Source of the DNA: Ophelia neglecta
Taxonomy: Eukaryota
Assembly (NCBI GenBank): GCA_965285935.1
Contig: OZ260661.1
Coordinates: 133,672,001 to 133,736,000, forward strand
DNA length: 64,000 bases
Reading direction: 5' to 3'
Position 1 is the first letter of the stretch, and every line of letters starts with the position of its first letter. Both the position numbers and the translations under genes were made by a program. The notes under the pieces were generated by a model. It made no database searches. It had not been told where the DNA came from and saw nothing but the letters and a program-made list of their open reading frames with translations. Shown piece after piece: positions 14,901 to 42,968 of this stretch.

Positions 14901-15776
14901 TACAAATGGCTCATCGTATGTTGTTAATTCAAATTGATAATAAACAGAAGCCAACTTTAGTCGAATAGCAGACGTCAATTGCTTAATTTGTATGTCGCCA
15001 CTTCAATTGCGTTCTAATTATGCTCAATCATTCTATTAAAAGTTTTTTATTACCGTATCTGAGAAAATTGTATAATAACCATATTTATTCCAGATAACAC
15101 ATTATACATTGGCGTCGCTGTTGGATTAGTCGTTATAGTCGCTGCACTATTAACAGTAGCAATTATGGTAGTAAGGAGAATGAGGTATATTCCTGTAGAG
15201 TTAATATAATGTGTAGCTACAATTACGTCAGAACAATTTCTTCAAGCAAAAACAAAATAATTTACTAGGGATAATGCCATTGTCATATTGGAGGAAAATT
15301 AACGGCTTCCTTTATTCTGGTTAATAGCTTTGCTTTTATACGTACATATTTTGGTAAATTTTGTATTGAAAGAAAATTGCTAAATATAGTGTTACTATTT
15401 TAGGAAAAGGACTGAAGGTCAGAAAGTCCACCTATACTATAATACAAGCGGGGGCATCATCGTTCAATCAAACCGTCAAGAACCAAATGACTTTAACTGT
15501 GAAAGCGTAGAGTCCAATTATCAAAATATCATGGACGTTTCCACGATAAAAGAACCCCAATCCACTACAGGCAATCACACATACGGTAATATGCCTACGT
15601 ATGATGAGGTTTGTATAAATAAGAGAGATCAGTTGCCAGAGGATAATCACTCGCTAGGCGATATGTGTGCCGTGCCCCACAAGCAGAAAAAAACTCGTTT
15701 TCCTGGGATAGAAGTGGCACGGCTGGATCAGGATGATGGAACGACAGTGATAGACAACAGTGTCTATGGGCGGTAG
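11992..15776 (+). CDS. CTLR2: type I transmembrane C-type lectin-like receptor (~375 aa, 6 exons)
   Basis: Exons 11992-12067, 12219-12381, 13717-14000 (not in ORF track; IECDIAQGC..YWIGL..WKWQDGS..EPKG..WAD..FICEMP), 14646 (or 14664)-14786 stalk, 15094-15184 TM (LYIGVAVGLVVIVAALLTVAIMVV), 15404-15776 tail. The first three exons have the same lengths (76/163/284 nt) as in CTLR1. Confidence 0.88.
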
Positions 15777-18249
15777 ACAACATATACAAAGCATAGAAGT
15801 ATAAATATATGCGTCCTAGAATTATTAATATTAGTATTTTAATGTGTGATTAGATATTTTCATCTGTTGTAATAAGCCTGATGGAGTTGAATTTTTTTTT
15901 AAACATCTCACCCCATAAAACAATATTATTTCAGTTTGCTTATAAGATTAGATGGCAAGTGGCTTTCATGTATTCTGTTGAGTTTCACATTCTTGCTGTT
16001 TTGGTTTTCATTAATTAACAACTGCCTGTATCCGACACGTTGTAAACATTTCGTAGCTGAAAAAATCGATATCTAGTACGAAAACAAATAAAATATTACA
16101 CCGTTGGATATGCATTTTAATCTTCGATACCATATCTGTTATTTGATGTTCTGTCTGAAATACCTTTACTGTGCACATTTTCAAAACACAACTGTACATA
16201 AAAGAGTTTTCTAGTATCTTTTCTTTGTTATCAATATGGGGACCAGATGCTATTGAAATTGAATGGTGTCATGTAATATTGTTTATGGAAACGACATATG
16301 CATATACTACTTGACAACCTCAGTATAAAGAGATTATCCCAATGGCCCACAGCTCAATTCGGATAGGGACCTGGTTTCAAAAAGGGAATAGAAGCTATTT
16401 TGTCTTATTTGGTTTTTTTTTCGTTTTCATTTCTTGATATTCGGAGTAAGACTTTTCGGCGAGTGGTGACTTAACATGCGAGTGGCCAGTTATAAAAGCG
16501 AGTTATGAAATATATGATCGGTGTTCTGAACGCAAGTTGAATTGACGATGATAGTTATCTTCAATTTACGAATAATATTTAGCATCATCGCTCTATAATT
16601 CACATGTTATTCATGACGTAATTACATGTTTCTCAAGAAGACCATGCCAAATGACTGGCATCACTTATACAGTAAGCATGTGGCCAACAACGTCAAAAAA
16701 AACTGATTGCATAATGAAGTTACAAAGTGCTTAGATTAGTTAGGTAAAACATTTAACACATTTAACTTATTAAGAATTAATAATAGTCATGGGCAGAGTT
16801 TTCCCGAAGACGGGCGGCGCAATTGAAATAAAAGTTATAGGATAAAAAGATGAAATATGTGCAAATATCTCTCTATTGTTAGTTTCTTGAAATTTGAAAT
16901 GCAATTAAACCTCGCCTAGACAATAATATATTATTGCCTCTAAACTCTCTTGCTGACTTGGCTCCTCTGCCTTGCCAGTATGGCTGCCAGTGATGAATGA
17001 CAGTGTTACATTTAGGGATCATCCCTTCCAAATATAGGTAAAACAGTGAGCGTTCAGGTAAGTTATACATAGTCGTTGACAATGCATTTCAAAAGGAAAT
17101 AAATAAGGTAATTCAGAGAATACCATAATGGTCTTCACATATCAGCGCTTAACTCAATTGCAGGTACAGTAAGTGTGTGTGTGTTATGGTGTGTGTGTGT
17201 GTGTGGGGGGGGGGGGTCCGGGAGGGGTACGGGTTCGGGAAAACAGGGATTGGGGCACGTGGTAACACAGGGGAGCATTGTGGGAGGGGCCCAACAGGCG
17301 AGTGGGGGGTGGTGTGATAGGCTAGGGGAAAAAACCAGAGGATATGACATGTTAGATTACTTAGGGGGAGCATGGAGGACAAGAGAAACGGGGGGGGGGG
17401 GGGGGTACTGGTGGGAAATTGGCTCCGAGATGTTAAAATCCACTGGCCACGGGCGGTGGAAGAGGAAGTGTCGTAGCAGTGCCAGTGATATCTATGGTAG
17501 GTTTTTCTATGTCCTTGGATTCTATGATTCTATTATATGTATTATGCCTTAAAGGTAGCCTTGGTAGGGTACAGATTCTCTGTCCCTGAATGGTAACCCT
17601 AATGTGTGCAAAAGCGTGGTTTTCATAGAGGCCGTTTTTGAGAAAGAAATACGATTAAATTGCTGATTGTGTATGAGGCTATGATGACTGCAGAGCAATG
17701 AATTTTCTATTTAAAAAAACAGTAAATTCTTGTATGTATGTTTGTGTCAGGAAGGCCATTCTTTCCCGTTTCTTTGTGTACTTTCACATTGACAACAATA
17801 ACAGGAATGCGGGGAGAGGTCAGGAGGGGGTAATCTGCATTAATGTTCATGTGATATTCTTTTGGAGATAAAGCTCTGTTGCTTGGCGAAAAGAATAGGC
17901 AGCCCTAACTTGCAATATTTGCATCAAACTTAAGATCAGTCTATTCAGCCACCCCCCCCCCCCCCCCCCGGAGTGAGAGGCACCTTTTTTTAATTAGCAC
18001 CTCGCTACTCGCCGAAAGGTCTCACTCCGAATTTGCAATCGATTTCTTTGTTAACCCATTGCACATAAGAAGAGGACTTGCAAAGAATTTCTCGAGGAAG
18101 AGCAATACCGGGGGTGGGGGGGGGGGTGGCATTGCGAACACCTGACTTAAAGCCAACCGATTAACCCCAGTGTAGACAGTGCGGCCATGCTGAGGGGAAT
18201 GACCCCATTCTTGCTATGCTCGGAGACCGGAATTTGGTGATGCCTTTTA

Positions 18250-21459: not shown

Positions 21460-24400
21460 ATGGCGGAACGTTCACATACATTTTATGTATTCATATTACT
21501 GTATTTGTCATGGAGTATATTTGTGCCGATATCAGGTAATATATCCTCCCAATTATGATATATTAATACTTCGTCCGAGCTACAAATATTACATGTGATA
21601 TATATCTTTGTGAAAAAGTTTACATTGTATATCAATTTACATTGCAATATTGTACGTTTAGTGAATGAAAATTATATCACAGGAGCAGTTTGTGATCCAG
21701 AATGGTATCCACACAAAATGAATTGTTATCATAAGTCCAGCAACTTTACATCATGGTGGAAAGCCAACGATATATGTAACATAATGGACTCCCATCTTGT
21801 TTCTATAACAGACCCAGAAGAAAATCAATTCATCCGAGACACATTGTGAGTAGTAGTCCACATGGCATTTTTCTATGGAAATATATTGCTTATCAGGTAC
21901 CGATTTTCAATATCATGTAAAAATGCGATACCTTGTGTGAAATCAATGAGTGTCAAATTAGCTCGCATAATTAAATAACTGGGGTGGTAGGTGGATTGCA
22001 GTTACAGACTTGGAATTTCTTGAAATGTATGAAAACATTTGTTTGAATTGAATATTCTTTATTACCAAGTTGATGTCCAAAAATAAAAATAAAATTATTT
22101 TTACGGTCAAATAAGAAAGATAAAGTAACATGTCGTAAGTAAACATAAATGTGTTTAATACATGTCAATAAACAAAGTCATAAAGGACAGAAGCAAATAC
22201 GAGGAAAAATCTAGTATTATCAATTCTAGCGATATATTGTTAAATACCTATTGTAAGTTTGTTTATAATAAGGAACTGAGAACTTGTATGTATACACATG
22301 CGGTTTATGACTCCCCCTCACCCCCACTCCACTTCTAGTAATAAACTCCCAAGTATTGCAGAGAAAGTTTTGTGTTGGAAATTTTTGTTGGGGGGATGTA
22401 TATATGCACAGTTATCGTGTGTCGTAAATGAGCAATATACCAAATATTAAAACCCCTCCCCGCCCCCTAAAAGTTCCTTATTTTAATGGGCCGGATTGCA
22501 TTACACTACAGTGTTTGAACCTACGCATTTGCACTTTGCGATTATGCTTTGATTCTGAATTAAAGACATCCTGGGAAAAGGGGGCGAATATATTGGCCTA
22601 CGGTCTGAACGGTCGGTTTTTCAGAGGCGGAATTAACATTCAGGGAGTCCATTTTAGTATCACACAAGAAATAAAAGAAGGTTCAACAGAAAGACTTCAG
22701 ATGGGCCCTTGTAAGAATGGCCCCACGAGAGGGAAGTCAAACAGTTCCAGTCTGGAGAGGTTTAAAACAAAGCTTCGGGAATGCACTGATCCAACCAAGA
22801 GTGTCATTGGATACTGCCCAGTTATTAATGCCTCACCTACAGATTTGTCCACAGTTTACACCTTGCTGAAACCGTCGGTGGAAATGGCACAAAAAGCTTG
22901 GTCAAACAAAAACCATTATAGTTTTTGACCAGGCAATCTATGCATAGGAATTAGTTATTTTGAGAAATCCTCAACAATTTTGTTCAGTCGTTTTGAGGGT
23001 TGCGGTTTCCATATAGGTCTCACGTTCCTGGCAGTTATTAGCAAACGGTTTGGCACTGCAGGATTATCAGACCTTAGGAGACAATCAGAACTTGGAAGTT
23101 TGGGATCAACCAATGGTGTTATAGTTTTTTTTATTGACCTCCGCTTTCCGGAGAGCTTAAGGTGGTACATATAACATAACGTGTTTAACATTATTAGGCA
23201 ATGAACAATATGGTAGGTGTGAGGTTACATATTCAAACGTACAGGAATATAAAATAGGATATTAATTTAGTACAACCTCGAATCAAGGAGCTGTCACATG
23301 AGTATAGTGGTCTCTTTAACCCTGCTAGTAGGCCTAGGCCTATACATTATATTTTTATAGACGAGCCATACCACCTACGGGAATACATAGAGAAGAGGGT
23401 ACCGAGAATTAGCTCTGTCCCCTTAGAACCAGAAATGACCATGGCAAGGAAAGCTAGAGTCAACATGTCGTAAGGTGCGCAGGGATCTATCGCATGGTCT
23501 CTTAGGTACTGTATGAGCGTGTCTCTGCTAGATCCTGTCTCCTGGCACACCCACAAGAGATGGGAGAGAGTGTCACCAGCTTCACCACATGTCGGACAGA
23601 CATCCCCAGTATTTGTCTGCACATGTCTCACTGTATGCTCGTAGAGGCCTGACGTCTTAGTGGTAAGGGCCATCACTATTTGTGCTCCTTTTATCTGCCT
23701 CATTGTTTTGGCGATTTTCCACATGCCTATTAGTTCATAGTCCGGACAGGAGTCTCTGAAAATATCCAGATTTTGATATGACAGGCATTCCAGTTTCCAA
23801 AGCATAGTCTGACATGTGCGAACGGTATTGCGGGTATGATTCTTCCACATCCCCTTGGACGGTGTTGTTCTTGTGTGCAGCCATGATCTAAGAGTGTCCT
23901 CCAAGCCGTACTTCACATAGGTATCTACCATGACACCTGATGTGCTCTCAATTGCTTCAATGCCGACAATGTCCCACTCGGTTAGTGCGCGAATGACCAA
24001 TGACCGGTAGATTGAGCTAGCAGGGAGAGCCAGCAGATCTCTCATTAATCTCAAGCGTCTGAGGTCAATGTAGTTTTCCACCGACCACCATCCCAGGGGA
24101 GCCAGGGCAGCAGGGTTCGCTGTGTGTCTCGGAAGACCTTGTATGCGTTTAGCTAATTGTCTGTGTTCAGTTTCAAGGCACATGATATGTTTTCTAGAGA
24201 GATGAATCACCTCTAGGCCGTACAGCATTCCAGGGACAACAATAGCCCAGTAAAGTCTGGAGAGAAGGGGTGTATTGTACCGACTCACTGCCTTGCCAAC
24301 GCCTAGCAGAGAATTCATTGATTTCTTTCCTCTATCTACGCGCTCTCTGAGGGCTGCTTGTTTCAGGCTTCCTGGTGGGCATAGAGGTACGCCGAGGTGT

Positions 24401-27400
24401 GATGTAGCTTGCTTCTGTGGGATGCTTTCACTACCCAGCATATATTGTACTGGTCTCGTTTCTTCTTTGCCGAACACCAATAATTCACACTTAGAAGCGT
24501 TAAAAGTCAGTTTCCATCTAGTGCCATACGAATAGGCCATCTTGCACAGTTCCTGCAAGGTCTTCGCATGTAGGGCTACTATTGTGATGTCATCCGCGTA
24601 GCCCGGGCAGGCGGAGTTTAGGCCGTAGGCAATAGAGCCTAGACCGCTATTCTCTATCAGTTTGAAGAGGCCGTCGTACATGTATGTGAATAGCAGCATG
24701 GAAAGGAGCCCTCCTTGGTGTAGACCTTGGCCGTGTGAATACCACTCTGATGTGCCTCCGGCCACACGAACCGCGCTCTCAAAACGGCGGTACCACGATA
24801 GGAGGATGCTCCATAGTTTCCCTCTAAATCCCAGGTTATAATTTCGGTAGAACAAACCAGAGAACCACACCGTGTCGAAGGCTTTACGAGCATCCAGCAT
24901 AGAGATATACACGGTCTGGCCCCGGGAACGGTGATATTCTATGGCCCCCCGTAAGTGCATTGTTGTATTGAGACTGGAGCAGCCCGCCTGACATGCCGCC
25001 TGCATGGGGCTCACAAGGTGCTTTCCGTCCGCCCATTTAACCATCCTTTGCATGAGCACACCCTCATACAACTTGCAAATGATGGTCAATAGAGTTATTT
25101 TACGGTAACTGTCTTTGAGCGTCGGGTTCTTTCCACCACGTTTATAAAGCGGAATGTCGATTCCCCTTCTAAAGATTACAGGCACATACTCAAGCCTAGT
25201 AATGGCTGTGAATATGAAGGTGAGGATTTCCGCCAGCTCTTTACCGCCGTGTTTGAAGTGTTCGGGAGCAATGTTATCCCACCCGCCAGCCTTACCAGTC
25301 CTTAGCCGTGTGATACAGTGGGCGACCTCATCTTCCGAGATTGGAGGTCCCAGGATGTTATCATCTTGCTGGGGAGAAAGTTGGTCATAAAGCTCGACCC
25401 TAGATTCAATTAGAGAATGAAATGACTGATCAAAGTCCTTGTTTTCCTTGGGTTGACTGAGGTCGAAGAAGTAGTCTCTCCATTCCCTGCGGATATCATC
25501 GGGGTTGGTTACTATCTGGCCACTTTCAGATTGAAGGATAGTGTTTTTGTTTTCATGCCCACTTTGGCGGCGATTATTCACAAGGCGCCAGAAAAAATTT
25601 CGGTCTACGTCGTTAGTGCGAAGGATATCCTCCTGTTCTTTTTCCTCGCTCTCGTGATCGGCGCAGCGTCTCTCTCTTCTATATAGTCGTTTGCTCTCCT
25701 CGAAGAACGCCAATACGAGCCCACAAAATGCCGATAGAAGGTATGCAGCGACTTAAATGGCACTCGATGTTTGGCTCTCTGCTCGGGAGCAACAGTATGA
25801 AATGAATACCAAGGTTGTAAATAATCTACCAGCTGATAGCTCATACATCTCTGTTCCAAAAGATGTGCAACAGGACCTACAGGTGGTACAACAAAAAGGA
25901 AATTAAATGTTTGCCAGCTTCGTTCAGCCCTGATTAGTAAATGAATGGGTCAGTTTCTTTGACAAGATTCCTGAATTGAACTCAAGAGTTTCAACGATGT
26001 CATAAAAATATAACATGTCAAGCACAACAATCAGGTTTTTATCCTCAATGTTGATCCTAGTCTATCTGCTCGGTTAGTCATTATGGCTCAAAACCGAAAA
26101 TGAACTTGAAGCCTATCATACGGACTTTGACCACTTCCGTGGTCGCTTGCAACTGTCGACGGGGGCAATCCAAAACAAACAAGGCGACATTTGAAAACTT
26201 AGATTTAATAAGTTGAATATGTTCGAACCACCGAAGTTCGGATTAATAATTACACCAAGGAATCTTTTCAATCGTTCTCCACTGATACAAACATCACAAG
26301 AAGAAACAGTACGTCGATAATCAATGCAAATACAATATATTGAGGTGTTTTAACATAGAGTTGTATTGAGTTGAGTTGTTTGGGTTTTTACGTGGCTTTC
26401 AACACTTATCGGTCATATCGCCACGGTGCCTACTTGTGACAGTGGGCTCAATGCCCTCTTTAGAGTACTGCCTCACTGGAGTACCTGCCGTAGACACTAG
26501 CCAGGGAACCCCACCCAGTCACATTATACTGTGTAGCCCAGTCCTGATACTACCCCCGAAATACCGGGCGCCTAGCAGGGGAGCTATCAGTACCTATTTT
26601 TGGGTCTAGGGTTTGGAGCGATCGAGATTTGAACCCCGATCTCCCACTTGCGAGGCGGACGCTCTTACCACTCGGCCACGCATTGGTGTCATTCAAGAAG
26701 ATTACCATGTTCTACATTCAGAGTTTCAATCAACGCATCCAAATTTTTATCAATAACAAAAACCTTTGTATTATCGGTAACAAGTACAGGAAATAAGAAC
26801 GATTATAAATTAATCATATCGTTAATATATAAAAGAAATAGTTAAGGCCCCAGAAGCGACCCAGGTAGTACACCGCAGGAAATAGGTCTGCTCTCGGAGG
26901 TAGTTTTGAGATAAGACTCATATTAGGATCAAATGATCGAATAATAACTGAGCCATGCCTGAGCAACTCCCCTTATTCTATATTTATTAACAGTGTTGAA
27001 TGGTTTCGAAAAATCTCAAAAATACCACAAGGACCATGTCTACATCCATTTGAAATTTTGTCAAGAAGAATGAAATTTTTACTGCAATTAATAAATTGGT
27101 GATTATTTAAGATCTAACAAACGGCGTGACTTCACACTGTCTCTACTACCTTATTCACTGCCGATTACCCTTAACTGTACACATTGTAAGACTGGCTATA
27201 AATTACAATGCGATGGGAAATAACGCCCTGTTAGAAGGACTTTTAGCAGAGGATAATTGTATAGACTTAAAGTCACGGGGTAAATAGAAAGTGGCGCCGG
27301 TCCATACATCTTAAAGTGGGTGACTAGGGTATATCTGAATACGTGTTTCCTTACTTATAGTATACAGGAGAAACACAATCGAGAAATCAAATAGCAATAT

Positions 27401-30400
27401 GTTGACCGTAGAAAGATAAGGCATCATTAATTTTACAATTACTTTTCAGATTTATGTTGGAGGATTTGTTATATATTATAATTTACATACGTATTTAGCT
27501 ATTAATTATCTCTAATTTTGATGAAAAACTGCCTTCGGATTTAATGATACCTAATTAATAGACCAAATTTATATTTATATTACCGGCTGGCGACCCAGAA
27601 TGGTATAAATTCAAAGCGACTTATCATACTCCCGGGATCTGATGATCATGTATGTATGTACGTATGTATGTAATTCATTTATTTTCTTGAAACAAGCCAT
27701 GACGCCAACAATAGCTAAGAGCCGTTTGGTGTTGGACGCCCTTTGCCACTACAGCCAATATAGTTTTTGATTATGTTATTACATCTATATCTATAGAAAA
27801 GTATTTTCGCACATAGCAAATGTATATAAACCAAACTGGAAATAATTTCCACAAAAAGTACTAAATTATAATCACAAAACAGAAGCTAATAATAAAATAA
27901 GTCGAACATATCAGCAAAATAAGCAAATCTATCTAGTCACAGGCAGTGCTTATTGCCTAATATGTAACCTTAAGTATATATAAAGAATATGATTACAGCA
28001 TGTATTTTCATACAGCAGACATGCATATAGGCCAATTGAAATGATAATTGTCATATTATAATACATTCATGCTTGAATCACAAACCAAAGCAAACACAAA
28101 GAAACAAACGATGGGATGATGCTAGGCAATTCCGTATCAGGGAATTCTTTCTCGCTTCTATCCGACTATTTAATACGCGAATGTTTTCTATTTCAGTATC
28201 GAGTTATGCACTGATGACAGAGCATGTCAGGAACAAACAAAGGATTTATTGATTGGGTTAATTAAAACAACAGACCTTACAGGAAATTCGTCACAACGAC
28301 GAAGTGGCTGGATGTGGGAAGATGATTCCAAATACGATTGGTTTAACTGGTATGGAGATGACTCGGTCGAGGACATGGACCGTGAACCCAAAGGTTTCAC
28401 ATGCAGAGCTGTAATGATGTACGATGGAACATGGGCTGACAAGAACCCCAAAGATTTCAAATTCATTTGTGAGAAAAAAGGTAATCTCGTAACGCCTTAT
28501 ACTTTCTTAACTTGACGCTTCTATGTTGATCGGGAGTTGCCTTGACTCAATTACACTATCCATGTGTTACCGGGAAGACAAAGTATCGTATAAGGCATCC
28601 ATACTTAGATTTGTTGGTTTCCAAACTCGTGAGGTTTTTTATTTGAGTTTCGCCGCATACGCTTATGTTGGCATGTCAACCTTTTTTCTTGTTTTAAGCA
28701 ATAGTACCCGTTATCCGAGTTGTCCAGTGGCACGCAATTTTTTTTTACAATTTGTTATAGGAATCTACATCAAATATTTTTTTATATTTCAAACCTGGAT
28801 GAAAACTATTAAGAAATACAGTTTAATCAAACAAGATGTATCTGTTCCTGTCTGCCGCTATGTCCATTGCCCTAGCAACTTCTACCGTTTCTAGTTAGTC
28901 TTAGCCGATTTAACCCATAAGTCAAAACAACTGGTTTATTTTTCATACTTTCCCAAGCTAGTCTTCTATGAAACAAGACAAATTATGGAGTCAACAGCCT
29001 TTTGGGAGAAGTATTGATTATTATTGTTGAAAGTAGTACAAAAACGATTTTAGCCCTTGAACAATACTTAGTTGATCGATTTTTATGGCGTTGGTTCAAA
29101 AACTTTTTCCGCTTAAACAACCAGGTCGGTCGGTCGGATAAAGGAAAAATAAACAGCAGTGAAAGTGCTGGTTGGGTAGGTTGGTTGGGTAGAACTTATC
29201 CACTTGCTTAACAATTAATTTTCTGTATCTTGCTAACTATGTCCCTGCATAGATGCAAATCTGTACAGTTACGTTATATATAAAACTCCGTAACTGAGAG
29301 ATTAAGGAAATGGAGCGAGACGGGATAGCGGACAGGAGACGGATAATCAATGATTTTAGCAACAATTGGAAGAAAGTAAAAGGTTTTGGGCCGACTAAGG
29401 GAAAGAAAATCATAAATTTCTTTACTGCCGTGAGAAGGTTTTGAGAAAAGGCCAAATTTATTTTTGGTTCATCCTTTGTTTAAAAAGTCGTCGGGTGAGG
29501 AAACCGTGTTTAAGAAACAAAAAATCCTATGGAGTCGTATTGTTCTTTGTTACCTGTCATCTTCCCTTCCTTTATTTGTTGTTTGGAGAGCATTGCATTA
29601 ACATTCAACGTGCACACATGTCCTTAATTCTTTCTCTTTTATTGACTTCTTGGAGCAGCCAAATATGATCTGACAGAAGCTCCTATTTCAACGAAATCGC
29701 CCTTCGACGAAGTGACAGCAACCGGACATAGGCCATCGATCACAACCTTTGGCGTATCGGACACCAACCAGGGTCCTTATAATTTTACATACACAAAGGG
29801 ACAAAATGTTTTTTTGAGTTCATGAGTCATTACCCCAATCTAGCATGTTTCTAGCGTTATTGTTGAAAGAGTATTTAAAAAGTGATCTTGTGGAAATCCA
29901 GCCAATCTAAAATCACTGTTGATGCTTGTCTTCAAGCAATTCGCCTCAAATAATAATTTGTTTACACTAAACGTATATCGGTCTAATGCATCAGCTATTA
30001 CACCTTCTTATAACTCTTTTTTCCAGACCCCTCTCTTTACATTGGCATCGCCGTGGGATTGGTATTGCTTATTGGTTTAATATTAATTACTGTAGCCACT
30101 TTGTTTAGGAGGAAAATTAGGAGGAGGTATTTTGTTTTGGATTAAATAATATCTAGTCTCAATGGTTTGTCCTATTGTCACTTTAATGACAGATGTGCGT
30201 TTGTTTTTATTTATCATGAAATTGGAATCCACCACACCCTCATAAAGAACGTAGTTCGAATTTTGCTTAAGCCCTTCTGATATTTTAGGAAAAAGGACGA
30301 GAATCAGGAACGCAACATTTATTATAATACGAGAGAAGGAATGACAGAACAAATTGGGAAGCATGAGAGAAATGTACCGAATCCCTGTAATGATTTGGAC

Positions 30401-30520
30401 ACGGTAGAATCGAATTATGAGGAACTCATTGGTGTTTCTTCAAATGGTGATGAAGCATATCCTACACAGAACAATAATCACGTATATTGTATTGTGCGTG
30501 CCCAAAATGAGCGACAATAG
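21460..30520 (+). CDS. CTLR3: chimeric C-type lectin-like receptor with truncated tail (possibly a pseudogene)
   Basis: Exons 21460-21535 and 21683-21845 (CTLR2-like); 28197-28480, ~29656 onward (stalk, splice sites unclear), 30027-30126 TM and 30289-30520 (CTLR5-like). A 14-nt deletion relative to CTLR5 gives TAG at 30518-30520; the ancestral end VENSVYGD* is still visible to 30643. WIGL is changed to LIGL. Confidence 0.7.
22450..26240 (+). mobile_element. Degenerate DNA-transposon transposase-like relic (tentatively Academ-like), interrupted by a LINE
   Basis: Fragments IGYCPVINASPTDLSTVYTLL, VFDQAIYA*, GFH..FLAVISKRFG.AGL.DL, STNGV (to ~23124) resume after the LINE as IRAHKMPIEGMQRLKW (~25712). 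Family assignment is from memory of these motifs, not from a search. Confidence 0.55.
23125..25710 (-). mobile_element. 5'-truncated LINE with uninterrupted RT ORF (23347-25713, 788 codons)
   Basis: RT motifs KAGGWDNI, YRKITLL, LDARKAFDTV, GLHQGGLLS, YADD; C-terminal CPTC-x8-H-x4-C knuckle; no endonuclease domain; 3' UTR ends in AATAAAAAAAA at ~23125-23135 on the minus strand. Confidence 0.95.
26352..26688 (-). mobile_element. tRNA-derived SINE, copy 1
   Basis: Minus-strand head has an A box (TGGCCGAGTGG) and B box (GGTTCAAATC); the body matches the copies at 46.3 and 59.1 kb; simple-repeat tail. It is absent at the paralogous position in CTLR5 intron 2 (~39940). Confidence 0.85.
26700..27100 (-). 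mobile_element. Old LINE RT fragment in CTLR3 intron 2
   Basis: Paralogous to 39950-40330; decayed F.KPF.TV and GV..GS.LG.LLFL motifs on the minus strand. Confidence 0.6.
27650..28110 (-). mobile_element. Probable 3' end of a non-LTR element inserted in CTLR3 intron 2
   Basis: Interrupts gatgatcatg|ggatgatgctaggc, which is contiguous in CTLR5 (~40870). The minus-strand end has AATAAA followed by a (CATA)n tail. Confidence 0.6.
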
Positions 30521-31699
30521 TCAAACTGTGAGTGAATTTTACGCGGTGCCCCACAAGCGTAATGGCCGATGTGAACCCGAACAGGATCGGATGAACAGGA
30601 CACCGACAGAATGCTAGTGGAGAACAGTGTGTATGGAGATTAACCTAAACATTTTTTCCGAACTGAAATATGATATTGTCATCTTGTAATAAAATACTCC
30701 ATTATTTTTAAAACTATTTTCAAAGCAAATCGCTGTATGATTTTGATAATAAATCGCTTGTTCTAATTCAACCCACTCGTGAAAAACCTTTGTCCACGCC
30801 GAATATAGTCTAGCTATATTTATAGATGGAACTGTAATTCTAATAACTGTGTTCCTATGTTCCTATGGCCCAAAATGATGCATCTTAATAACAGACGAGA
30901 AAAAGCTGCACTGCTAAGCAGCTGTTTTTAGCGATGCCATTTTTATATCGTTATATGTTCAGCCAATTTTACAAATTTCGCAATCATCGCAAAATTAACC
31001 TGTATGCAATCTCCCTAAGATGGCGCACGAACTGCCGAAAAGGGGCATTCACAACTTCGACACAATGTGCAAATTTTCAGTACAGAAATGTCAGATCGAG
31101 AAGGCCAAGTATATTGGGGCTTTTGCTATCGTGGGTTTGTGTGACACTCAGAAGTGTGTAGATATGTAGAGCCGTAGACCTATAAGTAAATACGTAACAC
31201 CAAAAGAATTTGAAATCAAGGGATGGTCTTTTTTCCAGGCACATCGATACAGGAGGGTTTGTGTCATTATTTCTTTGAAAGACACATCGAGCTCACCAAA
31301 GTGGCTTTTGACACCGCAGAAAGTATTAAACTACGTTCAAGCGTGAAAGGGTAGGCTAGTCTTGGGGCGGAACAGACGTGTTCTGGTCGCGAGTGGCCAT
31401 TCTTGGTATTTTAGGTTGCCAAAACACAAATAAAACATATCTACAAATGACTACGACCGGGAGAAACTTCGGGAACTGTCATATGGTATTTGGATTGCTA
31501 AAGGTGGACACGTTTATTACTTTTTGGCGTTTTTTTTCTCGTAGAATCTGCTCAGAACAACATTATATCACCCACTGTTACTTCTAGGACGAACAAATCC
31601 CTATTCACTGCAATACACAAGTGTGAAAGCCACCAAAGCAGTTCATTTGGGCATAATACCCTTGTCACCCTACTTGGTGGGGGAGTATAAAGACTGTTG

Positions 31700-34986: not shown

Positions 34987-37107
34987 ATGGCGGAAAGTTC
35001 ACACACCCTTTCTGCATCCATATTACTGTATTTTTCATGGATTTTATTCGTACCACCATCAGGTATTTGTCTTAACATCATACGATATGCATACACCGTC
35101 AGAGCTTTCATATACCTATCTTATCAGCTATTAGGTGTATACGCCTACACTGTATAATTTATATCATACACAATTATGTACGTTAGGTAATTGACAATAG
35201 TATTGCAGGTGCAGTTTGTGATCCAGCATGGCAACAATACCATGCAAGTTGCTATTTTAAGTCCACTAGGGAAACATCATGGGTTGATGCCAGAGATTTG
35301 TGTATGAACATGGACTCCCATCTCGTATCTATCACAGACCAAGAAGAAAATGACTTTATCAGGCGTACGTTGTGAGTGACATTTCATACTACAGTTTTAC
35401 ATGTACGAACTTTTTGTATAAGTAGACTTTTAAACAACTGTAGAGAAAACCGTACTATCGTGGAAATCAAGATGAAGGCTTGACACATACAAAACTTCGA
35501 TCTTATACAATAATTTGCATCGAAATATATTGTTTATACCTTGACCAGACTTTTAAGGCTGAAATTGTAACATACAAGTAGTAGTACTAGTAGTAGTATC
35601 ACATGCATGGCTAGAACAATAAGATGAGTACGTATATATATACAGGGAACCTGCGTTTGTGGTGATCTGTGTAATAAGGTCACCTGCCCACCAAAGTCAC
35701 TAAATATTAGCCCAATCCTCATTTATGCCTGTGTTAACCGCCCATTAAGGCAAACTACATAATGTGGTTATTCCAAACTATTGCGTGACCTGACTAGACA
35801 GGTTTCAATGTATTACTTCACAGTATATAGACTGTGACGCCAACTGACAGGCAGGTGAAAACGCTGTCGAGCAATTGTAAATCATCGAAGGAATGTCCAT
35901 CAATGCTGCTATGAATATGCAAATGAGCAAACGCCGATCTCGCAAGTAGCTTTTGGTTTTATGAACGGAAAATGATTCCTTATCATGGGAGAACTTTTAG
36001 TATCCTTGCAATGTATTCACATCGTTTGTATCAAGGGAGCTTTTTATGCTAAATTAGGGCATTTACTGCCTGTTTTGAATTTGGTGTTATATCAAGAACA
36101 AAAATGGGAACTTTGTTCTAGCGATTTCTTCTAGAACCGTGTTATAAGTATAAATATAACAATTATTTAAATATCATATCTTCTTATAAAATTGGCATAA
36201 GCCTGCCGATATCCCCAATTTTATCGTCCCGCCATGACATTCAGATAATAATGAGGTGTTAAATGTCATGGCTGCAATGCATGTTTACTTTATTCCATTT
36301 TACCCCAGTTTATTCAAAAAACGCGATTACTGTCTATTTAAAGACGTTGCAGATCATCTATGTTGTTAGCAGGTTATAGTAACTGAGATTTTAGCTACAT
36401 TAGATTTTGCTTGGTATATGAATAAGACAGAAACGCCTGTCTGGATTACATTATTTGTGTTGGTATGTTAAATAAATTTAAATATTAATCTTTTTAAATC
36501 CCAAACCCGTAGTGCATTATGCACGGCTTCCTGCACAGAACACACATATTTATCAATGGTTTACACCAACCCGTCTATTTGCATCGGGTTTTCATGTTAC
36601 GGGTGTGTTAAGGGCTTGACAAGTATATTAGGGTTCGGTTCCGCAAGGGAACGAGTACTATATTGCCATTGTAAATTGCTACATTTTTTAAGCGTCAACA
36701 CAGAAATAGTAATTTACAACTGTATGTCCACTGCCGATAATATACATACTGTCATTGTCCTATAATATACACATTTATAACACTCCTTTGGTCTTTTTTA
36801 TGTATGACATATGTTGATTCCAGTGTCGAAATATGCACCGTTAGCACAGAATGTAAAGAACAAACACAAGATGCATGGATTGGATTGTCGAAAATGACAG
36901 ACATGTCCGGAAATGTGACACAACGACGAATGGACTGGATATGGGTGGATGGATCCAAATACCAATGGTCTAACTGAGATGGTAGTGCCCCAGTCCCGGA
37001 TGTCAGGCGTGAACCAACGGCATTCACAGAGAAAGCCCGAACACAGTACGATGGGAAATGGGCTGCCATGACCCCAAATAACATCAGGTTTATCTGTGAG
37101 AAAGTAG
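34987..37107 (+). pseudogene. CTLR4: truncated pseudogene copy of CTLR1
   Basis: Exons 34987-35062, 35209-35371 and 36824-37107 and their introns are nearly identical to CTLR1. TGG>TGA nonsense change at 36975-36977. Homology ends at ~37620 and no stalk, TM or tail exons follow. Confidence 0.88.
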
Positions 37108-38725
37108 GTAACCTCATAATTAGCTATTCAGTGTTACCATAGTGCTTTAATGCTGACCTGAGTGGCAAGTTAACAACAATCGTATCTATTGGCTAATGGA
37201 AAGACCCAATTCTGGTTTAGCAAACAAGATTTGTTTAATCGTGAAAAATCTTATGAAGAAGCAAAATTGATGAAATTGTGGTAATAATTATACACAACAA
37301 CACAGAAAGGGCCGATGATTTTTAAATATAGTGGCAAGATCAAATTCCTTGCAGAAAGCTTTTAATCTGCACGAAGAGCTTTATGTATGATCTAAACTTA
37401 GGGTAAAAAGGAACATGACCGAGGCTTATAAAACCATACTTCGCCAATGATACAAATTCGCCTATGATACAAAGTCTGTGTTGTTATGTACAGTATTTTC
37501 AACTTGTGTATTATTGCATGTATATATTTGTGTTCAAATAAATGGTTGAGTTGAAAAACTTGTATGGTGGACAATAAATTCATTGGTTAGGATATAACAT
37601 TTACTTGTAGTTTTAAATAGTAAAAGAGAAGGCATCAGAAAGATTCCTGCCCCGAATCTATAGGTAAGTTATTGGTATCTCGTATAACGTGTCACATATC
37701 TGCAATTGTGTAACAGCTTTGTCTATATAACTACATTGAAAAAGCGTAGGCATTGGTCCTCCATTATTGATGCTGGTAAGCTGTCCATGATTTATTCTAT
37801 GTATCTTATAAATCGTGAAGCGTCTGCTCAAAACATTGCCATTCGTTTCTCACAGGCGAGCTGAATGAATATGTCTATACGTTAAAATTCATGTTGTACC
37901 TTGAGCCTCAAACGGCATCCCAGACGCATACCCGCCTTACAAGTCTTATATTTGTAAACTTCTGTGGAAAGTTAATACTGTGTCCATTAGCTCGTGTAAT
38001 TTCGTCAATATATTATTATATACTGTTATTTGCGCCAATTTTAATTGATTGTAACCTACATTCACCACCAGGTGAGTGAGTTGACGGATCACGTAGGACG
38101 AACGACAACAGATGTCGCCTTTTTATGAGAAATGGGACTTTTTTCCTGCCTTTTTTAATCTCTTTCCCAGCGTGTAGTCCTAGCCGCCAGTCCAACCGTG
38201 ACGACACATACACTAACACAAGAGTGATTTATTTCCCTTTTTCCGTCTAGGGCGCAATACATCATGAACAATAATTATTCGAATTTATTGTCGATGTTGT
38301 CTAAGGTATGTTGTGTAATGTGTTCCAAGAAGGTTGCAGGTTGGACAATCTTGTAACGTAATTTGTTCACTCCAATACAAACTTGTCAAGGGCCCCATGT
38401 ATGATTTGGCGGTCTGCTGAGTTGAATATTAATAGGGTGTACTAATAAATTGAGATAAGCCTAAGGTGTTCACGCTTATTGGTTTACACATTATTTCATT
38501 CCTTAAACGCCACTGAATTTCAGTCAGCGGCCAAAATGCATAGTTCACTTGAAAGCAACAAGCACAAGATGTTAATCAGAGCATGAACATATTATAGCAA
38601 TATCTATACTCCAAGTGGTTCAGGTGAAACGTTGATTGTTACGCGGAAGCCGAGATAGACTGATTTAACACACTATTTCACTTCCTTGTATGCGCTGGAA
38701 TTCATATAGTCATGTGAAGTCTATC

Positions 38726-41700
38726 ATGGCGGAAGGTTCACACACATTTGATGTATTCGTATTACTGCATTTGTCATGGATCTTATTTGTGCCACAATCA
38801 GGTAATGTGTGCTCGGAATTACGAGCTTTCATAAATTATATCAGCCTTTATGTGGAGACCCTTACTTAATGTTTAAATTGACATTAAACTTTGCTACGTT
38901 TTGTAAATGAAAATTATATTGCAGTAGCAGTTTGTGATTCAGAATGGCATCAACATAATGGAAGTTGTTACTTCAAATCCAGTAGTATTAAATCATGGGC
39001 AGATGCAAAGTCGTCGTGCATGCATCTTGATTCCCATCTCGTATCTATCACAAGCCAAGACGAAAATATGTTCATCCGAACAACATTGTAAGTATAATTT
39101 CAGGTGACATATTTGTTCCGCTAACACATTTCAGCATTTATAAGTTAAAGTAATTACCAATTGTGGCGAAAGCCGTGAGAGCTGTGTTGTGAATTAAACT
39201 GCTGGTTGTACTGTATTGTATGTTTACATATCAAATAGTATGCATTGAAATAAATTGTATATATGATGACGTTTATTCAGGAGTGTTAAGGTTGGAATAT
39301 TCTTGATTTGAAATATAGCAGCGTCAAAATGACTAGTACTTTAGCTGCAGTAGTGTTTACTCTTAATGCATAAAAGCGCCATTTTTTATTCTCAGGATAA
39401 TGATACATTAAACCTCAACAGATATTACAGCATGTTCTTAGCATGCACATAAAACAAGTCTTAAATGTTGGTTTATACACAAACCCAATTATTTGCGCCG
39501 GGCTTCTACGTTTGGACATGCAGTATGGTATTCATAAGCAACGGTCAATTATTTATTTCGAGCCGACTTAATGGACTGTCGTTGAATTATGTTTCTACAT
39601 TGTCTTCCATTTATCTACTCCTGTTTTGTTTAAAAAACCTATACCTATACCTAGGTTAATGTCTACTAGAAGATCCATAAAATCAAAGAATAATGTAATT
39701 AAATGCTGCCATAAATTTCCCCTTGAATTTTTTAAACTTATTTTGGCAAACGGTATTAATTAAGAACGTAAGATCATATGAAATTCAACGTCCAAAGAAT
39801 TATTTATATATAATAAAAGAGTCCAAAGAATAATTATACCGAGGAATCTTTCCAATTGTTCTCAACTGATATACACATCAAAGGATATATTCCGTCGATA
39901 TTCAATGTAAACTACAATATATATTACGTTTTTTAACATAGAATCATTGAAGAAGATTAACCTTTTCTACATTAAGAGTTTCAATCAACGAATCCAAATT
40001 ATTATCATCTATAAAAACGTTTGTATCATCGGTAAACAGTACAGGAAATAAGGCCGATTATAAATTAATCATATCGTGTATATATAACAGAAATAGTAAA
40101 GGCCCCAAAATCGACCCAGGTAGTACACCGCAGAAAATAGGTCTGCTCTCGGAGGTAGTTTTGAGATATGACTCATATTAGGATCTAATGGTCGAATAAT
40201 TACTAAGCCATGCATGGGCATTCCCCTTATTCTGTAATTATTAACGGTGTCAAATGGTTTCGAGAAATCTCCAAAATACCATATTCCCATCCAGAAGAGC
40301 ATTTGAAGTTTTGTCAAGAAGTATGATATGAAATTTTTACTGCAATTAATAAATTGGTGATTATTTAAGATCCAACAAACCGCGTGCCTTCACACTGTCT
40401 CTACTACCTTATTCACTGCCGATTTCCCTTAACTATACACATTGTAAGACTGGCTATAAATTACAATGCGATGAGAAATAACGTCCTGTTAGAAGAACGA
40501 TTAGCCGAGGATGAATGGATAGACTTAATGCCCGGGTAAATAGAAAGTGGCACCGGTCCATACATTTTTAAGAAAGCGACTAGGGTATACCTGAATACGT
40601 TTTTCCTTACTTATAGTATTTAGGAGAAACACAATAGAGAGAGCAAATAGCAAAACGTTGACCGCAGGGAGATTTTTCACATTATCGTTGGATGATTTGG
40701 TGAAATGTTATAATATCATACGTTTTAGCTTTCAACATTCTTTAATTTTAAGAGAAACTGCTTGCGGTATTAACATTAACTACTAAATCAACCAAATTTA
40801 TATTTATATTATCGGCTAGCCACCTAGGATGGTATAAATACAAATCGACTTATCATACTCCCGTGAAATGATGATCATGGGATGATGCTAGGCAATTCCG
40901 TATCAGGGAATTCTTTCTCGCCTCCATCTGACTATTTTACACGCGACTTTTTTTTATTTCAGTATCAAGTTATGCACTGATAGCGGACAATGTATGGAAC
41001 AATTACAGGATTTATGGATTGGGTTAACTAAAACAAGAGGCCTTGAAGGAAATTTGTCACAACGACGAAGTGACTGGATGTGGGAAGATGGATCCAAATA
41101 CGATTGGTTTAACTGGTATGGCAATAACTCAGTCGATGACATGGACCGTGAACCCAAGGGGTTCACAGGCAAAGCTGTAATGATGTACGATGGGACGTGG
41201 GCTGACAAGAACCCCAGTAAAATCAAATTCATTTGTGAGAAAAAAGGTAATATCATAACGCCTTATGCTTTCTTATCTTGACGCTTCGATGTTAACTCAA
41301 TTACACTCTCCATATGTTTCCGGGAAGACAAAGTATCGTATAAGGCGTCCATACTTTGAATTTTTGGTTTCCAAACTAGTGAGGTCTTTATTTGAGTTTC
41401 GCCGCATACGCTTAAGTTGGTCTGTCAACCTTTCTTCTGGCTTTGGCAATAGTCCACGTTATCTGTGTTGTCCAGTGGCACGTACAGTTTTGCGCAATTT
41501 GAATATAGAAATCTAGATCAAATCAATTTTTGTATTTCCAACCTGGATAAAATCTAAGAAGAAATGTAGGTTTGTATATTGGAGGAGGCTCCTACCGGTC
41601 CGGCAACTCGTGACTGCAGCTATATTATTGAGTGGTGACTGAAAAACCTGTCTTCACATACAAGAATCTGTCTCCTACTAAGAGAAAGAACATCATAAAT

Positions 41701-42968
41701 TTCTTTACTGTCTTAAAAAGATTTTGAAAAAAGGTCAATTTATTTTTGGTTCAGCCTTTCCGCCGCATATCGACAGGTTTGTTAAAAAAAGTCGTCGGAT
41801 GAGGAAACCCTGTTTAAAATACAAAATATTCCTATGGAGTGTTATTGTTCTATGTTAACTGTCATCTTTCCTACCTTTATGTGTTGTTTCGTAGTGCATT
41901 GCATTGCATAGACATGCAGCGTGTACACATGTCTAAATTTCTTTCTCTTTTATTCTTGTAGCACACAAATTTGATTTGACGGAAGCTTCTATTTCAACAA
42001 AATCGCCCTTCGACGAAGTGACAGCTACCAGACATAGGCCATCGATCACAACCTTAGGCGTGTCGGACAACAACCATGGTCTTCATAATTCTACTTTCAC
42101 AGGGGCACAAAATATGTTTTAATTTTATAAGTCATTAGCCCTTACTAACATGTTTCTTGTGTTATTCATAAACGAGTATTTAACAAGAGATCTTGTGGAA
42201 CTCAAAGCTTACCTAAAATCACTGTTAATGCTTGTCTTCAATTCGCCACAAATAATAATCTGTTAACACCATACGTATATAGGTCTAATGTGTCAGTTAT
42301 TTCAACTTTATATAGCTCTTTTTTCCAGGCCCCTCTCTTTACATTGGCATCGCCGTGGGATTGGTATCACTTATTGCTTTAATAATAATAACTGTAGCAG
42401 CTTTGTTTTGGAGGAAAATTAGGAGGAGGTATTTTGTTTTGGATTTAACATATCTAGTCTCATTGTTTGTAACTTATTGTCCTACTGTTACTTTAATGAA
42501 AAATGTGCGTTCGATGTTTTTTGTCATAAAATCCACCGAATCCTCAGAAATAACGTAGTTGGAATTTTGTTTAAACACATCTGATGTTTCAGGGAAAAAA
42601 ACGAGGATCAGGAACGCAACATTTATTATAATACGAGAGAAGGAATGGCAGTAGACATTGGGAAGCATGAGACAAATGAACCGAATGCCTGTAATGATTT
42701 GGACACAATAGAAACGAATTGTCAGGATGTCATTGGTGTTTTTGCAAATGGCGAAGAAACACATCCTAGCAATACACAGAGCAATAATCACGCTAATAGT
42801 ATTGTGAGTAAGGACCCGGGACCCAAAATGAGCGACAATAGTCTAACTGTGCGTGACATTTACGCGGTGCCCCACAGGTATAATGACCGATATGAAACCG
42901 AACAAATTGTACCGGATGAACTGGACAACGACACAACGCTGGTGGAGAACAGTGTGTATGGAGATTAA
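38726..42968 (+). CDS. CTLR5: type I transmembrane C-type lectin-like receptor
   Basis: Exons 38726-38801, 38925-39087, 40963-41246, stalk from 41962 (donor unclear), 42329-42428 TM (LYIGIAVGLVSLIALIIITVAALFW), 42593-42968 tail. Open and in frame (332 aa) if the stalk exon is skipped. Confidence 0.82.
39950..40330 (-). mobile_element. Old LINE RT fragment in CTLR5 intron 2
   Basis: ORF 40069-40317 contains DFSKPFDTVN; neighbouring frames give GS.LGPLLFL.YI.D-like text. Confidence 0.65.

What the first reader, a model, noticed from the sequence alone, without database searches (positions are those of the whole stretch)
15404..42968. Complementary gain and loss of tyrosine motifs at homologous tail positions in CTLR2, 3 and 5
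Seen by aligning tails. Site A: SNYQNI (R2), SNYEEL (R3, ITIM-type), TNCQDV (R5). Site B: HTYGNM (R2), HVYCIV (R3), HANSIV (R5). Site C: DMCAVPH (R2), EFYAVPH (R3, now out of frame), DIYAVPH (R5). R2 also has TYDEV. The changes are simple Tyr-to-Cys/Asn codon swaps, so each paralogue keeps a different subset of SH2 docking sites. Inference: signalling output is being rewired between duplicates.
Basis: partly seen in the sequence, partly recalled or inferred. Interest (0 to 1): 0.75.

Follow-up and report, generated by a model that had tools for sequence, protein, structure and literature searches.

The report
Tyrosine motif losses in receptor tails
Three neighbouring lectin-type receptor genes of an invertebrate differ in which tail tyrosines they keep, but these are ordinary losses from a tyrosine-rich ancestral tail at the background rate, not a special rewiring.

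Summary
The strings are real: 10 of 10 motifs stand where stated, in the last exons of three five-exon, type I, single-C-type-lectin-domain receptor genes (R2, R3, R5).

"Complementary gain and loss" does not hold. The genome has two more copies of each tail type about 400 kb upstream, and an outgroup array of at least 12 receptors of the same build about 11 Mb away. All seven outgroup tail tyrosines are kept, 84 of 84. So sites B and C were tyrosines first, and the window shows losses:
- Site B is lost in all three R5-type copies.
- Site C is lost in all three R2-type copies.
- An 11-base deletion shared by all three R3-type copies cuts off site C.
- The site A cysteine is private to the window's R5. 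No read contig carries it.

Tyrosine columns change less than other columns (0.70 against 1.02 steps per column, P(≥)=0.90). Tail dN/dS is about 1.

The three tail types do carry different, stably inherited sets of tyrosines. Function is untested: no RNA run was listed and no relatives were found in protein databases.

The scan has noted other tyrosine-tail receptor families in this genome.

The parts
11992..12069 (+). R2 exon 1: start codon and signal peptide (26 codons)
   Evidence: Conserved block upstream of all five lectin genes, read, coordinates checked by reference
12224..12382 (+). R2 first C-type lectin domain exon (minimum extent; acceptor not fixed)
   Evidence: Pfam Lectin_C 25.8 bits, profile 4-34; tblastn
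13742..14008 (+). R2 second C-type lectin domain exon (approximate end)
   Evidence: Pfam Lectin_C 16.4 bits, below the cut-off on its own, profile 37-107
15094..15184 (+). R2 transmembrane exon, no charged residue in the helix, basic residues after it
   Evidence: Hydrophobicity scan, DNA with AG/GT borders, translation
15404..15776 (+). R2 tail exon (last exon, stop included). Tyr codons: site A 15519-15521 (TAT), site B 15582-15584 (TAC), extra motif 15600-15602 (TAT). Cys codon at site C 15666-15668 (TGT)
21460..21537 (+). R3 exon 1: signal peptide
21688..21846 (+). R3 first lectin-domain exon, 90% identical to that of R2
   Evidence: tblastn
23347..25713 (-). 788-codon reverse-transcriptase ORF (retroelement) inside the R3 intron between the two lectin exons
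   Evidence: Pfam RVT_1 84.1 bits
28231..28512 (+). R3 second lectin-domain exon (open frame; 77% identical to that of R5)
   Evidence: tblastn. No Pfam hit on its own
30027..30126 (+). R3 transmembrane exon
30289..30520 (+). R3 tail exon as now translated: 78 codons, then stop at 30518-30520. Tyr codons: site A 30416-30418, site B 30485-30487. An 11-base deletion relative to R5 lies just after 30499
   Evidence: the deletion and the stop are shared by 3 of 3 R3-type copies
30521..30643 (+). R3 dead remainder of the old tail: site C codon 30540-30542 (TAC) out of frame; a second 4-base deletion restores the old frame near the old stop
36975..36977 (+). In-frame stop in the second lectin exon of R4; R4 has no transmembrane or tail exon (pseudogene or remnant)
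38726..38803 (+). R5 exon 1: signal peptide
38933..39088 (+). R5 first lectin-domain exon (minimum extent)
   Evidence: Pfam Lectin_C 24.8 bits, profile 3-34
40994..41278 (+). R5 second lectin-domain exon (open frame; the donor lies about 30 bases before its end)
   Evidence: Pfam Lectin_C 21.1 bits, profile 40-107
42329..42428 (+). R5 transmembrane exon; donor GT at 42429-42430
42593..42968 (+). R5 tail exon (stop included). Cys codon at site A 42720-42722 (TGT), Asn codon at site B 42795-42797 (AAT), Tyr codon at site C 42861-42863 (TAC)
   Evidence: Reads: 42721 reads A in every contig laid there; 42744-42874 confirmed by one contig without differences

Best explanation
R2, R3 and R5 are tandem paralogues of a lineage-restricted family of type I membrane receptors. 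Each has a signal peptide, one C-type lectin domain split over two exons, a transmembrane helix, and a tail of about 130 residues encoded by one last exon.

The ancestral tail carried about seven tyrosines: a membrane-proximal pair, site A, site B, the motif that only R2 still has, site C with a Y-x-x-P core, and a C-terminal N-x-x-Y. The pattern in the window comes from lineage-specific loss, not from gain and loss.
- A nine-codon deletion in the R3/R5 ancestor merged two tyrosine motifs into one.
- Tyr to Asn at site B in the R5 type.
- Tyr to Cys at site C in the R2 type.
- An 11-base frameshift deletion cuts the R3-type tail after site B.
- A single A-to-G change at site A is private to the window's R5.

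These losses arose at or below the background rate of a tail that evolves almost neutrally among recent copies. This is birth-and-death evolution of a multigene receptor array. The array also holds a pseudogene (R4), a second frameshifted tail (R5c) and retroelement insertions.

Shown: the anatomy, the polarity of sites B and C, the rates. Inferred: the tyrosines matter, as phosphotyrosine docking sites or as sorting signals, because they are the conserved anchors across the wider family. The three tail types therefore probably differ somewhat in output.
For: ANATOMY.
- Lectin_C hits on both exon halves.
- Signal-peptide exons.
- Transmembrane exons with matching splice phases and a basic stretch on the tail side.

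FAMILY.
- Nine tails of three types sit in two places on one contig.
- An outgroup array of 12 intact tails has the same lectin, lectin, transmembrane, tail order.
- The C-terminal module gives 45 matches at E<=0.01, 23 of them at E<=1e-9.

POLARITY.
- Outgroup tyrosines are kept 84 of 84 (7 sites x 12 copies).
- Site A is Tyr in 8 of 9 ingroup copies.
- The site B Asn is in 3 of 3 R5-type copies.
- The site C Cys is in 3 of 3 R2-type copies.
- The frameshift is in 3 of 3 R3-type copies.

RATES.
- Tyr columns take 0.70 steps per column against 1.02 for the others, P(>=)=0.90.
- Recent changes at Tyr-bearing columns are 2 of 51 against 2.79 expected.
- Tyr is the best-kept residue type, 18 of 26.
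- dN/dS is 0.65-2.62 within types and 0.81-1.08 between R3 and R5 types.
- The tail exon differs at 15 of 360 bases between R5 and R5b. The 1756-base local alignment around it has 76 mismatches.

DECAY IN THE ARRAY. R4 has a stop. R5c has a 5-base deletion. An RT ORF lies in the R3 intron.
Against: - Small numbers. Ten Tyr columns give little power, and P(<=observed) is only 0.185, so 'Tyr is slower' is not shown either.
- Against the outgroup, Tyr columns are not significantly better kept than others: 4 of 9, 4 of 7, 4 of 8 and 3 of 6, with p 0.18-0.72. The outgroup's site A and its counterpart of R2's extra motif align only with a one-residue shift, so their polarity rests on parsimony inside the ingroup.
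- dN/dS near 1 can also come from a mix of positive and purifying selection.
- The type-specific tyrosine sets are each kept in three copies, which would also fit maintained functional types.
- No orthologue from another species was available (0 hits).
- No RNA run was listed.
Confidence: 0.7

Rival explanations
1. Adaptive rewiring. After duplication, selection removed different phosphotyrosine docking sites from each paralogue, so that one kind of ligand-binding domain feeds different SH2 or PTB pathways.
For: - Each tail type has its own tyrosine set, kept in 3 of 3 copies.
- Site A fits the inhibitory-motif consensus in 6 of 6 R2- and R3-type copies (the consensus is recalled).
- The genome has 67 SH2 matches over Pfam's cut-off.
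- Tyrosines are invariant in the outgroup array.
Against: - No excess of change at Tyr columns.
- dN/dS is about 1, and the exon diverges about as much as its flanks.
- R2 and R3 keep the same two of the three sites.
- The site A loss is private to one copy and is not seen in read contigs.
- No gain at the three sites.
- No charged residue in any transmembrane helix.
Confidence: 0.2
2. The tyrosines are sorting or endocytosis signals of cargo-taking lectin receptors (Y-x-x-hydrophobic and N-x-x-Y types), not SH2 docking sites. Losing them changes trafficking rather than signalling. This can hold together with the best explanation.
For: - The most widely conserved parts of the tail family are the Y-x-x-P core of site C and a C-terminal hydrophobic-acidic-N-x-x-Y end.
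- That end resembles the N-P-x-Y class of coated-pit signals known from endocytic receptors. This resemblance is recalled, not tested.
- R2 has 3 and R3 has 2 Y-x-x-hydrophobic motifs.
Against: - The Y-x-x-hydrophobic counts are not above shuffles: P 0.10 and 0.19. The window's R5 has none.
- Nothing here tells sorting from docking.
Confidence: 0.25
3. The array is decaying. R2, R3 and R5 are unexpressed or dying copies, and the tyrosine differences are meaningless drift in pseudogenes.
For: - R4 is broken.
- R3-type tails and R5c carry frameshifts.
- dN/dS is about 1.
- The tail exon diverges about as much as its flanks.
- No RNA holder was listed.
Against: - All five exons of R2, R3 and R5 are open, with matching phases.
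- All nine tail exons stay open up to their stops.
- The divergence is too small for open frames to prove constraint either way.
- The absence of listed RNA runs is not evidence of silence (text).
Confidence: 0.2
4. The site A cysteine of the window's R5 is an assembly or consensus error, or a rare allele, and the real gene has tyrosine there like its two sister copies.
For: At 42721 all contigs laid there in 3 of 3 runs of the one available sample read A. No contig with G was laid there.
Against: - The two listed pieces spanning 42721 (records 16 and 24) carry paralogue-type letters downstream, so they stem from sister copies or another allele.
- Logan contigs drop the rarer branch of a single-base bubble (text).
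- A window-specific contig exists just downstream (X1 record 8).
Confidence: 0.25

Closest known systems
Paired inhibitory/activating NK-cell receptor families (KIR, Ly49)
   Same: Tandem, fast-evolving multigene arrays in which the tail's tyrosine motifs are lost by point mutation or frameshift in some duplicates, so that family members differ in signalling. Abi-Rached & Parham 2005, PMC2213150: abstract and start of the introduction read.
   Different: - Here no transmembrane helix has a charged residue, so no switch to adaptor-coupled activating receptors is seen.
- The tails carry about seven tyrosines, not one or two ITIMs.
- Orientation is type I, unlike Ly49 (recalled as type II).
- No evidence of selection.
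Botryllus fester co-receptors (FcoR)
   Same: An invertebrate multigene receptor family whose tails hold two or more tyrosine motifs (ITIM, hemITAM and lineage-specific 'core' motifs). Alleles and splice forms differ by single substitutions or premature stops that remove motifs. PMC12582321: passages read.
   Different: - FcoR ectodomains are immunoglobulin-type, not C-type lectin.
- Expression and pairing were shown there. Nothing is shown here.
- No sequence relation was found (0 hits for the tail profile).
Vertebrate myeloid C-type lectin receptors with ITIM or hemITAM tails (Dectin-1 cluster, CLEC-2 and the like)
   Same: A C-type lectin-like ectodomain joined to a tyrosine-motif tail, encoded in gene clusters. 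Seen in search listings only (PMC11624271, PMC3576117). The rest is recalled.
   Different: - Those are type II proteins with short N-terminal tails (recalled).
- The genes here have an N-terminal signal peptide and a long C-terminal tail.
Type I endocytic C-type lectin receptors (mannose-receptor family)
   Same: Type I orientation and a tyrosine-based N-x-x-Y-like tail signal. This is recalled; no call tested it.
   Different: - Those have many lectin domains and short tails (recalled).
- Here there is one lectin domain and a 130-residue tail with many tyrosines.

Membership tests
C-type lectin domain proteins (Pfam PF00059) | Match to the Lectin_C profile over the whole domain | tested here: met
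   Exons were searched apart. First exons of R5 and R2 score 24.8 and 25.8 bits (cut-off 22.6) on profile 3-34. Second exons of R5 and R2 score 21.1 and 16.4 bits, below the cut-off singly, on profile 37/40-107. R3's second exon has no hit on its own but is 77% identical to R5's. The joined model was not searched.
ITIM-bearing inhibitory receptors | Consensus (S/I/V/L)-x-Y-x-x-(I/V/L) in a cytoplasmic tail (consensus recalled; a narrower form is quoted in PMC12582321) | tested here: met
   Site A fits in 3 of 3 R2-type and 3 of 3 R3-type tails. R5b and R5c have Thr at -2 (switch-motif-like). The window's R5 has Cys in place of Tyr. The narrower form, without Ser at -2, is not met.
ITIM-bearing inhibitory receptors | Tyrosine phosphorylation and recruitment of SH2 phosphatases | not testable with these tools
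   The only related result is that SH2 domains exist in the genome: 67 matches over the cut-off.
Paired activating/inhibitory receptor families (KIR/Ly49 type) | Tandem cluster of close paralogues with similar ectodomains and different tails | tested here: met
   Five genes lie in 40 kb. R3-R5 second lectin exons are 77% identical and R2-R3 first lectin exons 90%. The tails form three types.
Paired activating/inhibitory receptor families (KIR/Ly49 type) | Members that lost the inhibitory tail carry a charged transmembrane residue for an ITAM adaptor | tested here: not met
   No Lys, Arg, Asp or Glu within the hydrophobic helix of R2, R3 or R5. The truncated R3 tail still holds site A.
Vertebrate NK-complex / myeloid C-type lectin receptors | Type II orientation (N-terminal cytoplasmic tail, no signal peptide; recalled) | tested here: not met
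   A signal-peptide exon precedes the lectin exons. The transmembrane and tail exons follow them.
Tyrosine-based sorting signals (Y-x-x-hydrophobic) | More such motifs than composition predicts | tested here: inconclusive
   R2 has 3 (shuffle mean 1.24, P 0.10), R3 has 2 (0.82, P 0.19), R5 has 0.

The most novel reading that the evidence does not exclude
The array is an invertebrate counterpart of the vertebrate NK-complex. It would be a lineage-specific family of roughly 25-45 type I lectin receptors built on one seven-tyrosine tail. Sub-families would be kept as distinct signalling 'flavours': a full tail, a tail without the Y-x-x-P site, a tail cut after the inhibitory-type site, and a tail without site B. 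One recognition domain could then give graded or opposing outputs, as in self/non-self discrimination systems.
Probability: 0.15. Interest if true: 0.55.

Novelty: new member of a known kind. Interest (0 to 1): 0.3.

Why it matters
If the three tail types were shown to signal differently, this would be one more independent case of an invertebrate building a graded receptor repertoire by pruning tyrosine motifs in tandem duplicates. That principle is known from KIR/Ly49 and, lately, from Botryllus.

As it stands, the useful results are narrower:
- The apparent 'complementary gain and loss' is differential loss at the background rate.
- The genome holds a sizeable family of lectin receptors with a shared multi-tyrosine tail not detected elsewhere. 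That family, not the three-site pattern, is the thing worth following up.

Tried and rejected
- **Orthologues for ancestral reconstruction.** A HMMER profile of the nine tails against 1.84 billion representative proteins gave 0 hits at E<=0.001. Tails as distant as the outgroup array score only 24-28 bits against that profile, so they would not have been seen. The blank shows only that no close relative is there. I did not use the search for homologous proteins, because its length window (0.55-1.75 of a 126-residue exon) excludes full-length receptors.
- **R1's tail as a within-array outgroup.** BLASTP against R2's tail gave E = 0.36. I rejected it.
- **Significance of tyrosine conservation against the outgroup.** Not significant in any of four pairwise alignments.
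- **Outgroup invariance of tyrosines.** 7 invariant and 1 variable Tyr-bearing columns, against 87 and 30 for the rest, p = 0.68. This is not a test by itself.
- **Global alignment of flanks**. It overstated non-coding divergence because of indels and insertions, so I used local alignments instead.
- **First parsimony run**. It treated each type as a polytomy and over-counted steps. I redid it with resolved triplets.
- **RNA evidence.** None could be had: the three listed runs are contigs of one sample, kind unknown.
- **Rows dropped.** The 12-tail outgroup leaves out L019, L025, L026, L030 and L031, which are more distant and were read separately. It also leaves out L010 and L011, which are secondary pieces of R5c and R3.
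- **Supplements.** Supplementary files of the two papers were not seen. They hold the Botryllus tail alignments, which might bear on motif similarity.


Full report
**What is in the window.** The window (38% G+C, no N) holds five tandem genes on the + strand, R1 to R5.
- Each gene has a signal-peptide exon.
- Each has two exons that together match the C-type lectin profile. The first exons cover positions 3-34 at 24.8-25.8 bits. The second exons cover 37/40-107 at 16.4-21.1 bits.
- R1, R2, R3 and R5 also have a transmembrane exon and one last exon that encodes the whole tail.
- Splice phases fit. The transmembrane exon ends with two bases of an Arg codon and the tail exon supplies the third.
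- The order is signal peptide, lectin domain, helix, basic stretch, tail. The proteins are therefore type I and the tails cytoplasmic. The orientation is inferred from that anatomy.
- R4 has an in-frame stop in its second lectin exon (36975-36977). No transmembrane or tail exon was found for it.
- R1 has an unrelated tail.
- A 788-codon reverse-transcriptase ORF sits on the minus strand in R3's long intron.
They were searched apart.

**Check of the observation.**
- All ten strings occur once each at the stated places. R3's site C is in a different frame from R3's sites A and B.
- Sites A and C align in the same columns in DNA and in protein.
- Site B is less clean, because R3 and R5 lack nine codons that R2 has. 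The protein alignment pairs their site with R2's site B. The DNA alignments and the 21-tail alignment pair it with R2's extra motif. Either way one R2 tyrosine has no partner in R3/R5.
- The codon changes are single-base steps from TAT.

**More copies change the picture.** A six-frame search of the window's own genome found nine tails of these three types. Three are in the window. Six lie about 400 kb upstream on the same contig, two of each type.
- Site A is a Tyr codon in 8 of 9. Only the window's R5 has TGT.
- The Asn at site B is in 3 of 3 R5-type tails.
- The Cys at site C is in 3 of 3 R2-type tails.
- All three R3-type tails share the same 11-base deletion. It brings a stop six codons after site B, so the tail has 78 codons.
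- A further 4-base deletion happens to restore the old frame near the old stop, but four stops lie between.
- In the two other R3 copies the dead site C codon has already become CAC.
- R5c has a 5-base deletion that removes the C-terminal tyrosine.
- R2b and R2c have lost the second tyrosine of the membrane-proximal pair.

**Polarity.** A profile of the nine tails found more distant tails in the same genome.
- Twelve intact ones form an array about 11 Mb away.
- I examined the DNA upstream of two of its tails. One has both lectin exons and a transmembrane exon in the same order as the window's genes. The other shows only the second lectin exon.
- In these twelve tails the seven tyrosines are all present, 84 of 84. 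They are the membrane-proximal pair, a site A-like one, site B, a counterpart of R2's extra motif, site C and the C-terminal one.
- Site B with its two preceding residues, site C with its following four residues, the membrane-proximal pair and the C-terminal motif align without ambiguity. The Asn of the R5 type and the Cys of the R2 type are therefore losses.
- The outgroup's site A and its counterpart of the extra motif need a one-residue shift. Their polarity rests on the 8-of-9 count and on R2.
- Still more distant tails (L019, L025, L030, L031, L026) share mainly site C's core and the C-terminal end.
- A profile of that module gives 45 matches at E<=0.01, 23 of them at E<=1e-9, mostly between 133.2 and 144.8 Mb of the same contig.
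- No gain is seen at sites A, B or C.
- Possible gains lie elsewhere: one tyrosine in the R3 type and two after site C in the R5 type. I could not polarise them firmly.

| Comparison | Tyr-bearing columns | Other columns | Statistic |
|---|---|---|---|
| R2-R3, identical | 4 of 4 | 22 of 68 | p 0.01 |
| R2-R5, identical | 3 of 8 | 34 of 107 | p 0.71 |
| R3-R5, identical | 2 of 5 | 45 of 73 | p 0.38 |
| Parsimony steps, nine-tail tree | 7 in 10 (0.70) | 129 in 126 (1.02) | P(>=) 0.90; P(<=) 0.185 |
| Recent changes within types | 2 of 51 | – | 2.79 expected |

- Counted by residue type, tyrosine is the best kept of 19 types, 18 of 26.
- Tail dN/dS is 0.65-2.62 in nine within-type pairs.
- Tail dN/dS is 0.81-1.08 between R3 and R5 types at dS about 0.2.
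- R2 against R5 is saturated at silent sites.
- The outgroup array gives pooled pN/pS of 0.64 over 66 pairs.
- Tail-exon divergence is 3-6%. It is close to the mismatch rate of the long local alignments that include introns and flanks, 4-7%.
- The counts are small, so these tests have little power. They give no hint of an excess.

**Reads.** One sample with three runs, kept as contigs of unknown kind, holds the R5 stretch. No RNA run was listed. Laid at 97% likeness:
- One contig without any difference covers 42744-42874. It confirms R5's sites B and C.
- At 42721 every contig in all three runs reads A, the tyrosine codon.
- The two listed pieces that span it (records 16 and 24) carry the letters of the sister copies further on, so they are not the window's copy.
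- Contigs pop single-base bubbles, so the assembled G is neither confirmed nor refuted.

**How it most likely works.**
- Shown: a receptor family with a lectin ectodomain and a long tail whose conserved points are its tyrosines and their close neighbours.
- Inferred: the tyrosines act as phosphorylation-dependent docking sites or as sorting signals.
- The genome has the SH2 machinery, 67 matches over the cut-off.
- Site A fits the inhibitory-motif consensus in R2- and R3-type tails. Other sites resemble Y-x-N, Y-x-x-P and N-x-x-Y classes. These class names are recalled from the literature and no call tested them.
- Y-x-x-hydrophobic motifs are not more frequent than in shuffled tails.
- The three types differ stably in which sites they have, so some difference in output is plausible. 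It came about by erosion of a richer ancestral tail. No charged transmembrane residue appeared of the kind that marks activating partners in vertebrate paired receptors.

**Comparison with what is known.**
- Loss of tail tyrosine motifs by point mutation or frameshift in tandem receptor duplicates is the known history of KIR and Ly49 (PMC2213150, abstract read).
- Motif differences between alleles and splice forms are described for Botryllus FcoR genes (PMC12582321, passages read).
- The present case is a new member of that kind in another, probably annelid, lineage. The lineage comes from an earlier scan note that I did not test.
- It has a type I single-lectin-domain build. Its tail has no Pfam family and no detectable relative in the protein library searched.

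**Verdict.**
- Observation: partly confirmed. The strings and their homology are real. The pattern is not beyond background, and one of the three losses is private and unconfirmed.
- Interpretation: partly supported. Different subsets, yes. Gain, complementarity and accelerated rewiring, no.
- Interest is modest.

Noticed in passing
window 34700-37140 (stop at 36975-36977): R4 has a signal-peptide exon and both lectin exons. It has an in-frame stop in the second lectin exon, and no transmembrane or tail exon lies before R5 starts. It is likely a pseudogene or remnant, 86% identical to R1 in that exon.
   Followed up: partly
G000:C1:144.67-144.83 Mb (L017, L018, L020-L024, L027-L029, L032, L033, L039, L040): An array of at least 12 receptor genes with tails that keep all seven tyrosines. 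Upstream of one tail lie both lectin exons and a transmembrane exon in the same order as the window's genes; upstream of a second, only the second lectin exon was matched. Several neighbouring copies are identical in the tail, which suggests very recent block duplication.
   Followed up: partly
G000:C1 133.2-144.8 Mb, C5:29.48 Mb, C9:3.0-6.0 Mb: A bipartite C-terminal tail module occurs at 45 places (E<=0.01). It is a Y-x-x-P core, an acidic stretch and an N-x-x-Y end. In L026 and L031 the end unit is repeated twice in tandem. The ectodomains of most of these genes were not examined.
   Followed up: partly
G000:C1:133.24-133.33 Mb (L002-L005, L008, L009, L035-L038): A second region about 400 kb upstream holds two more copies of each tail type and of R1's tail, in the order R1, R2, R5, R3, R1, R2, R3, R1 (broken), R5. 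I did not test whether these are true segmental duplications or haplotypes assembled in series.
   Followed up: no
window 23347-25713 (-), 18615-20368 (+), 31881-33585 (+): A 788-codon reverse-transcriptase ORF lies in R3's intron (Pfam RVT_1). Further long ORFs without Pfam hits lie between R2 and R3 and between R3 and R4. These are probably retroelement remains.
   Followed up: partly
window 15585-15611 against R3/R5: R2 keeps nine codons between site B and the following Cys-Ile that R3 and R5 lack. Both flanks match well, so the R3/R5 ancestor lost one tyrosine motif by a 27-base deletion.
   Followed up: partly
window 21607-21846 and 28231-30640: R3's first lectin exon is 90% identical to R2's. 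Its second lectin exon (77%), helix and tail are R5-like.
   Followed up: partly
window 17135-17552: A low-complexity stretch gives overlapping ORFs rich in Thr-His and Gly on both strands. It is probably a dinucleotide repeat in the R2-R3 spacer.
   Followed up: no
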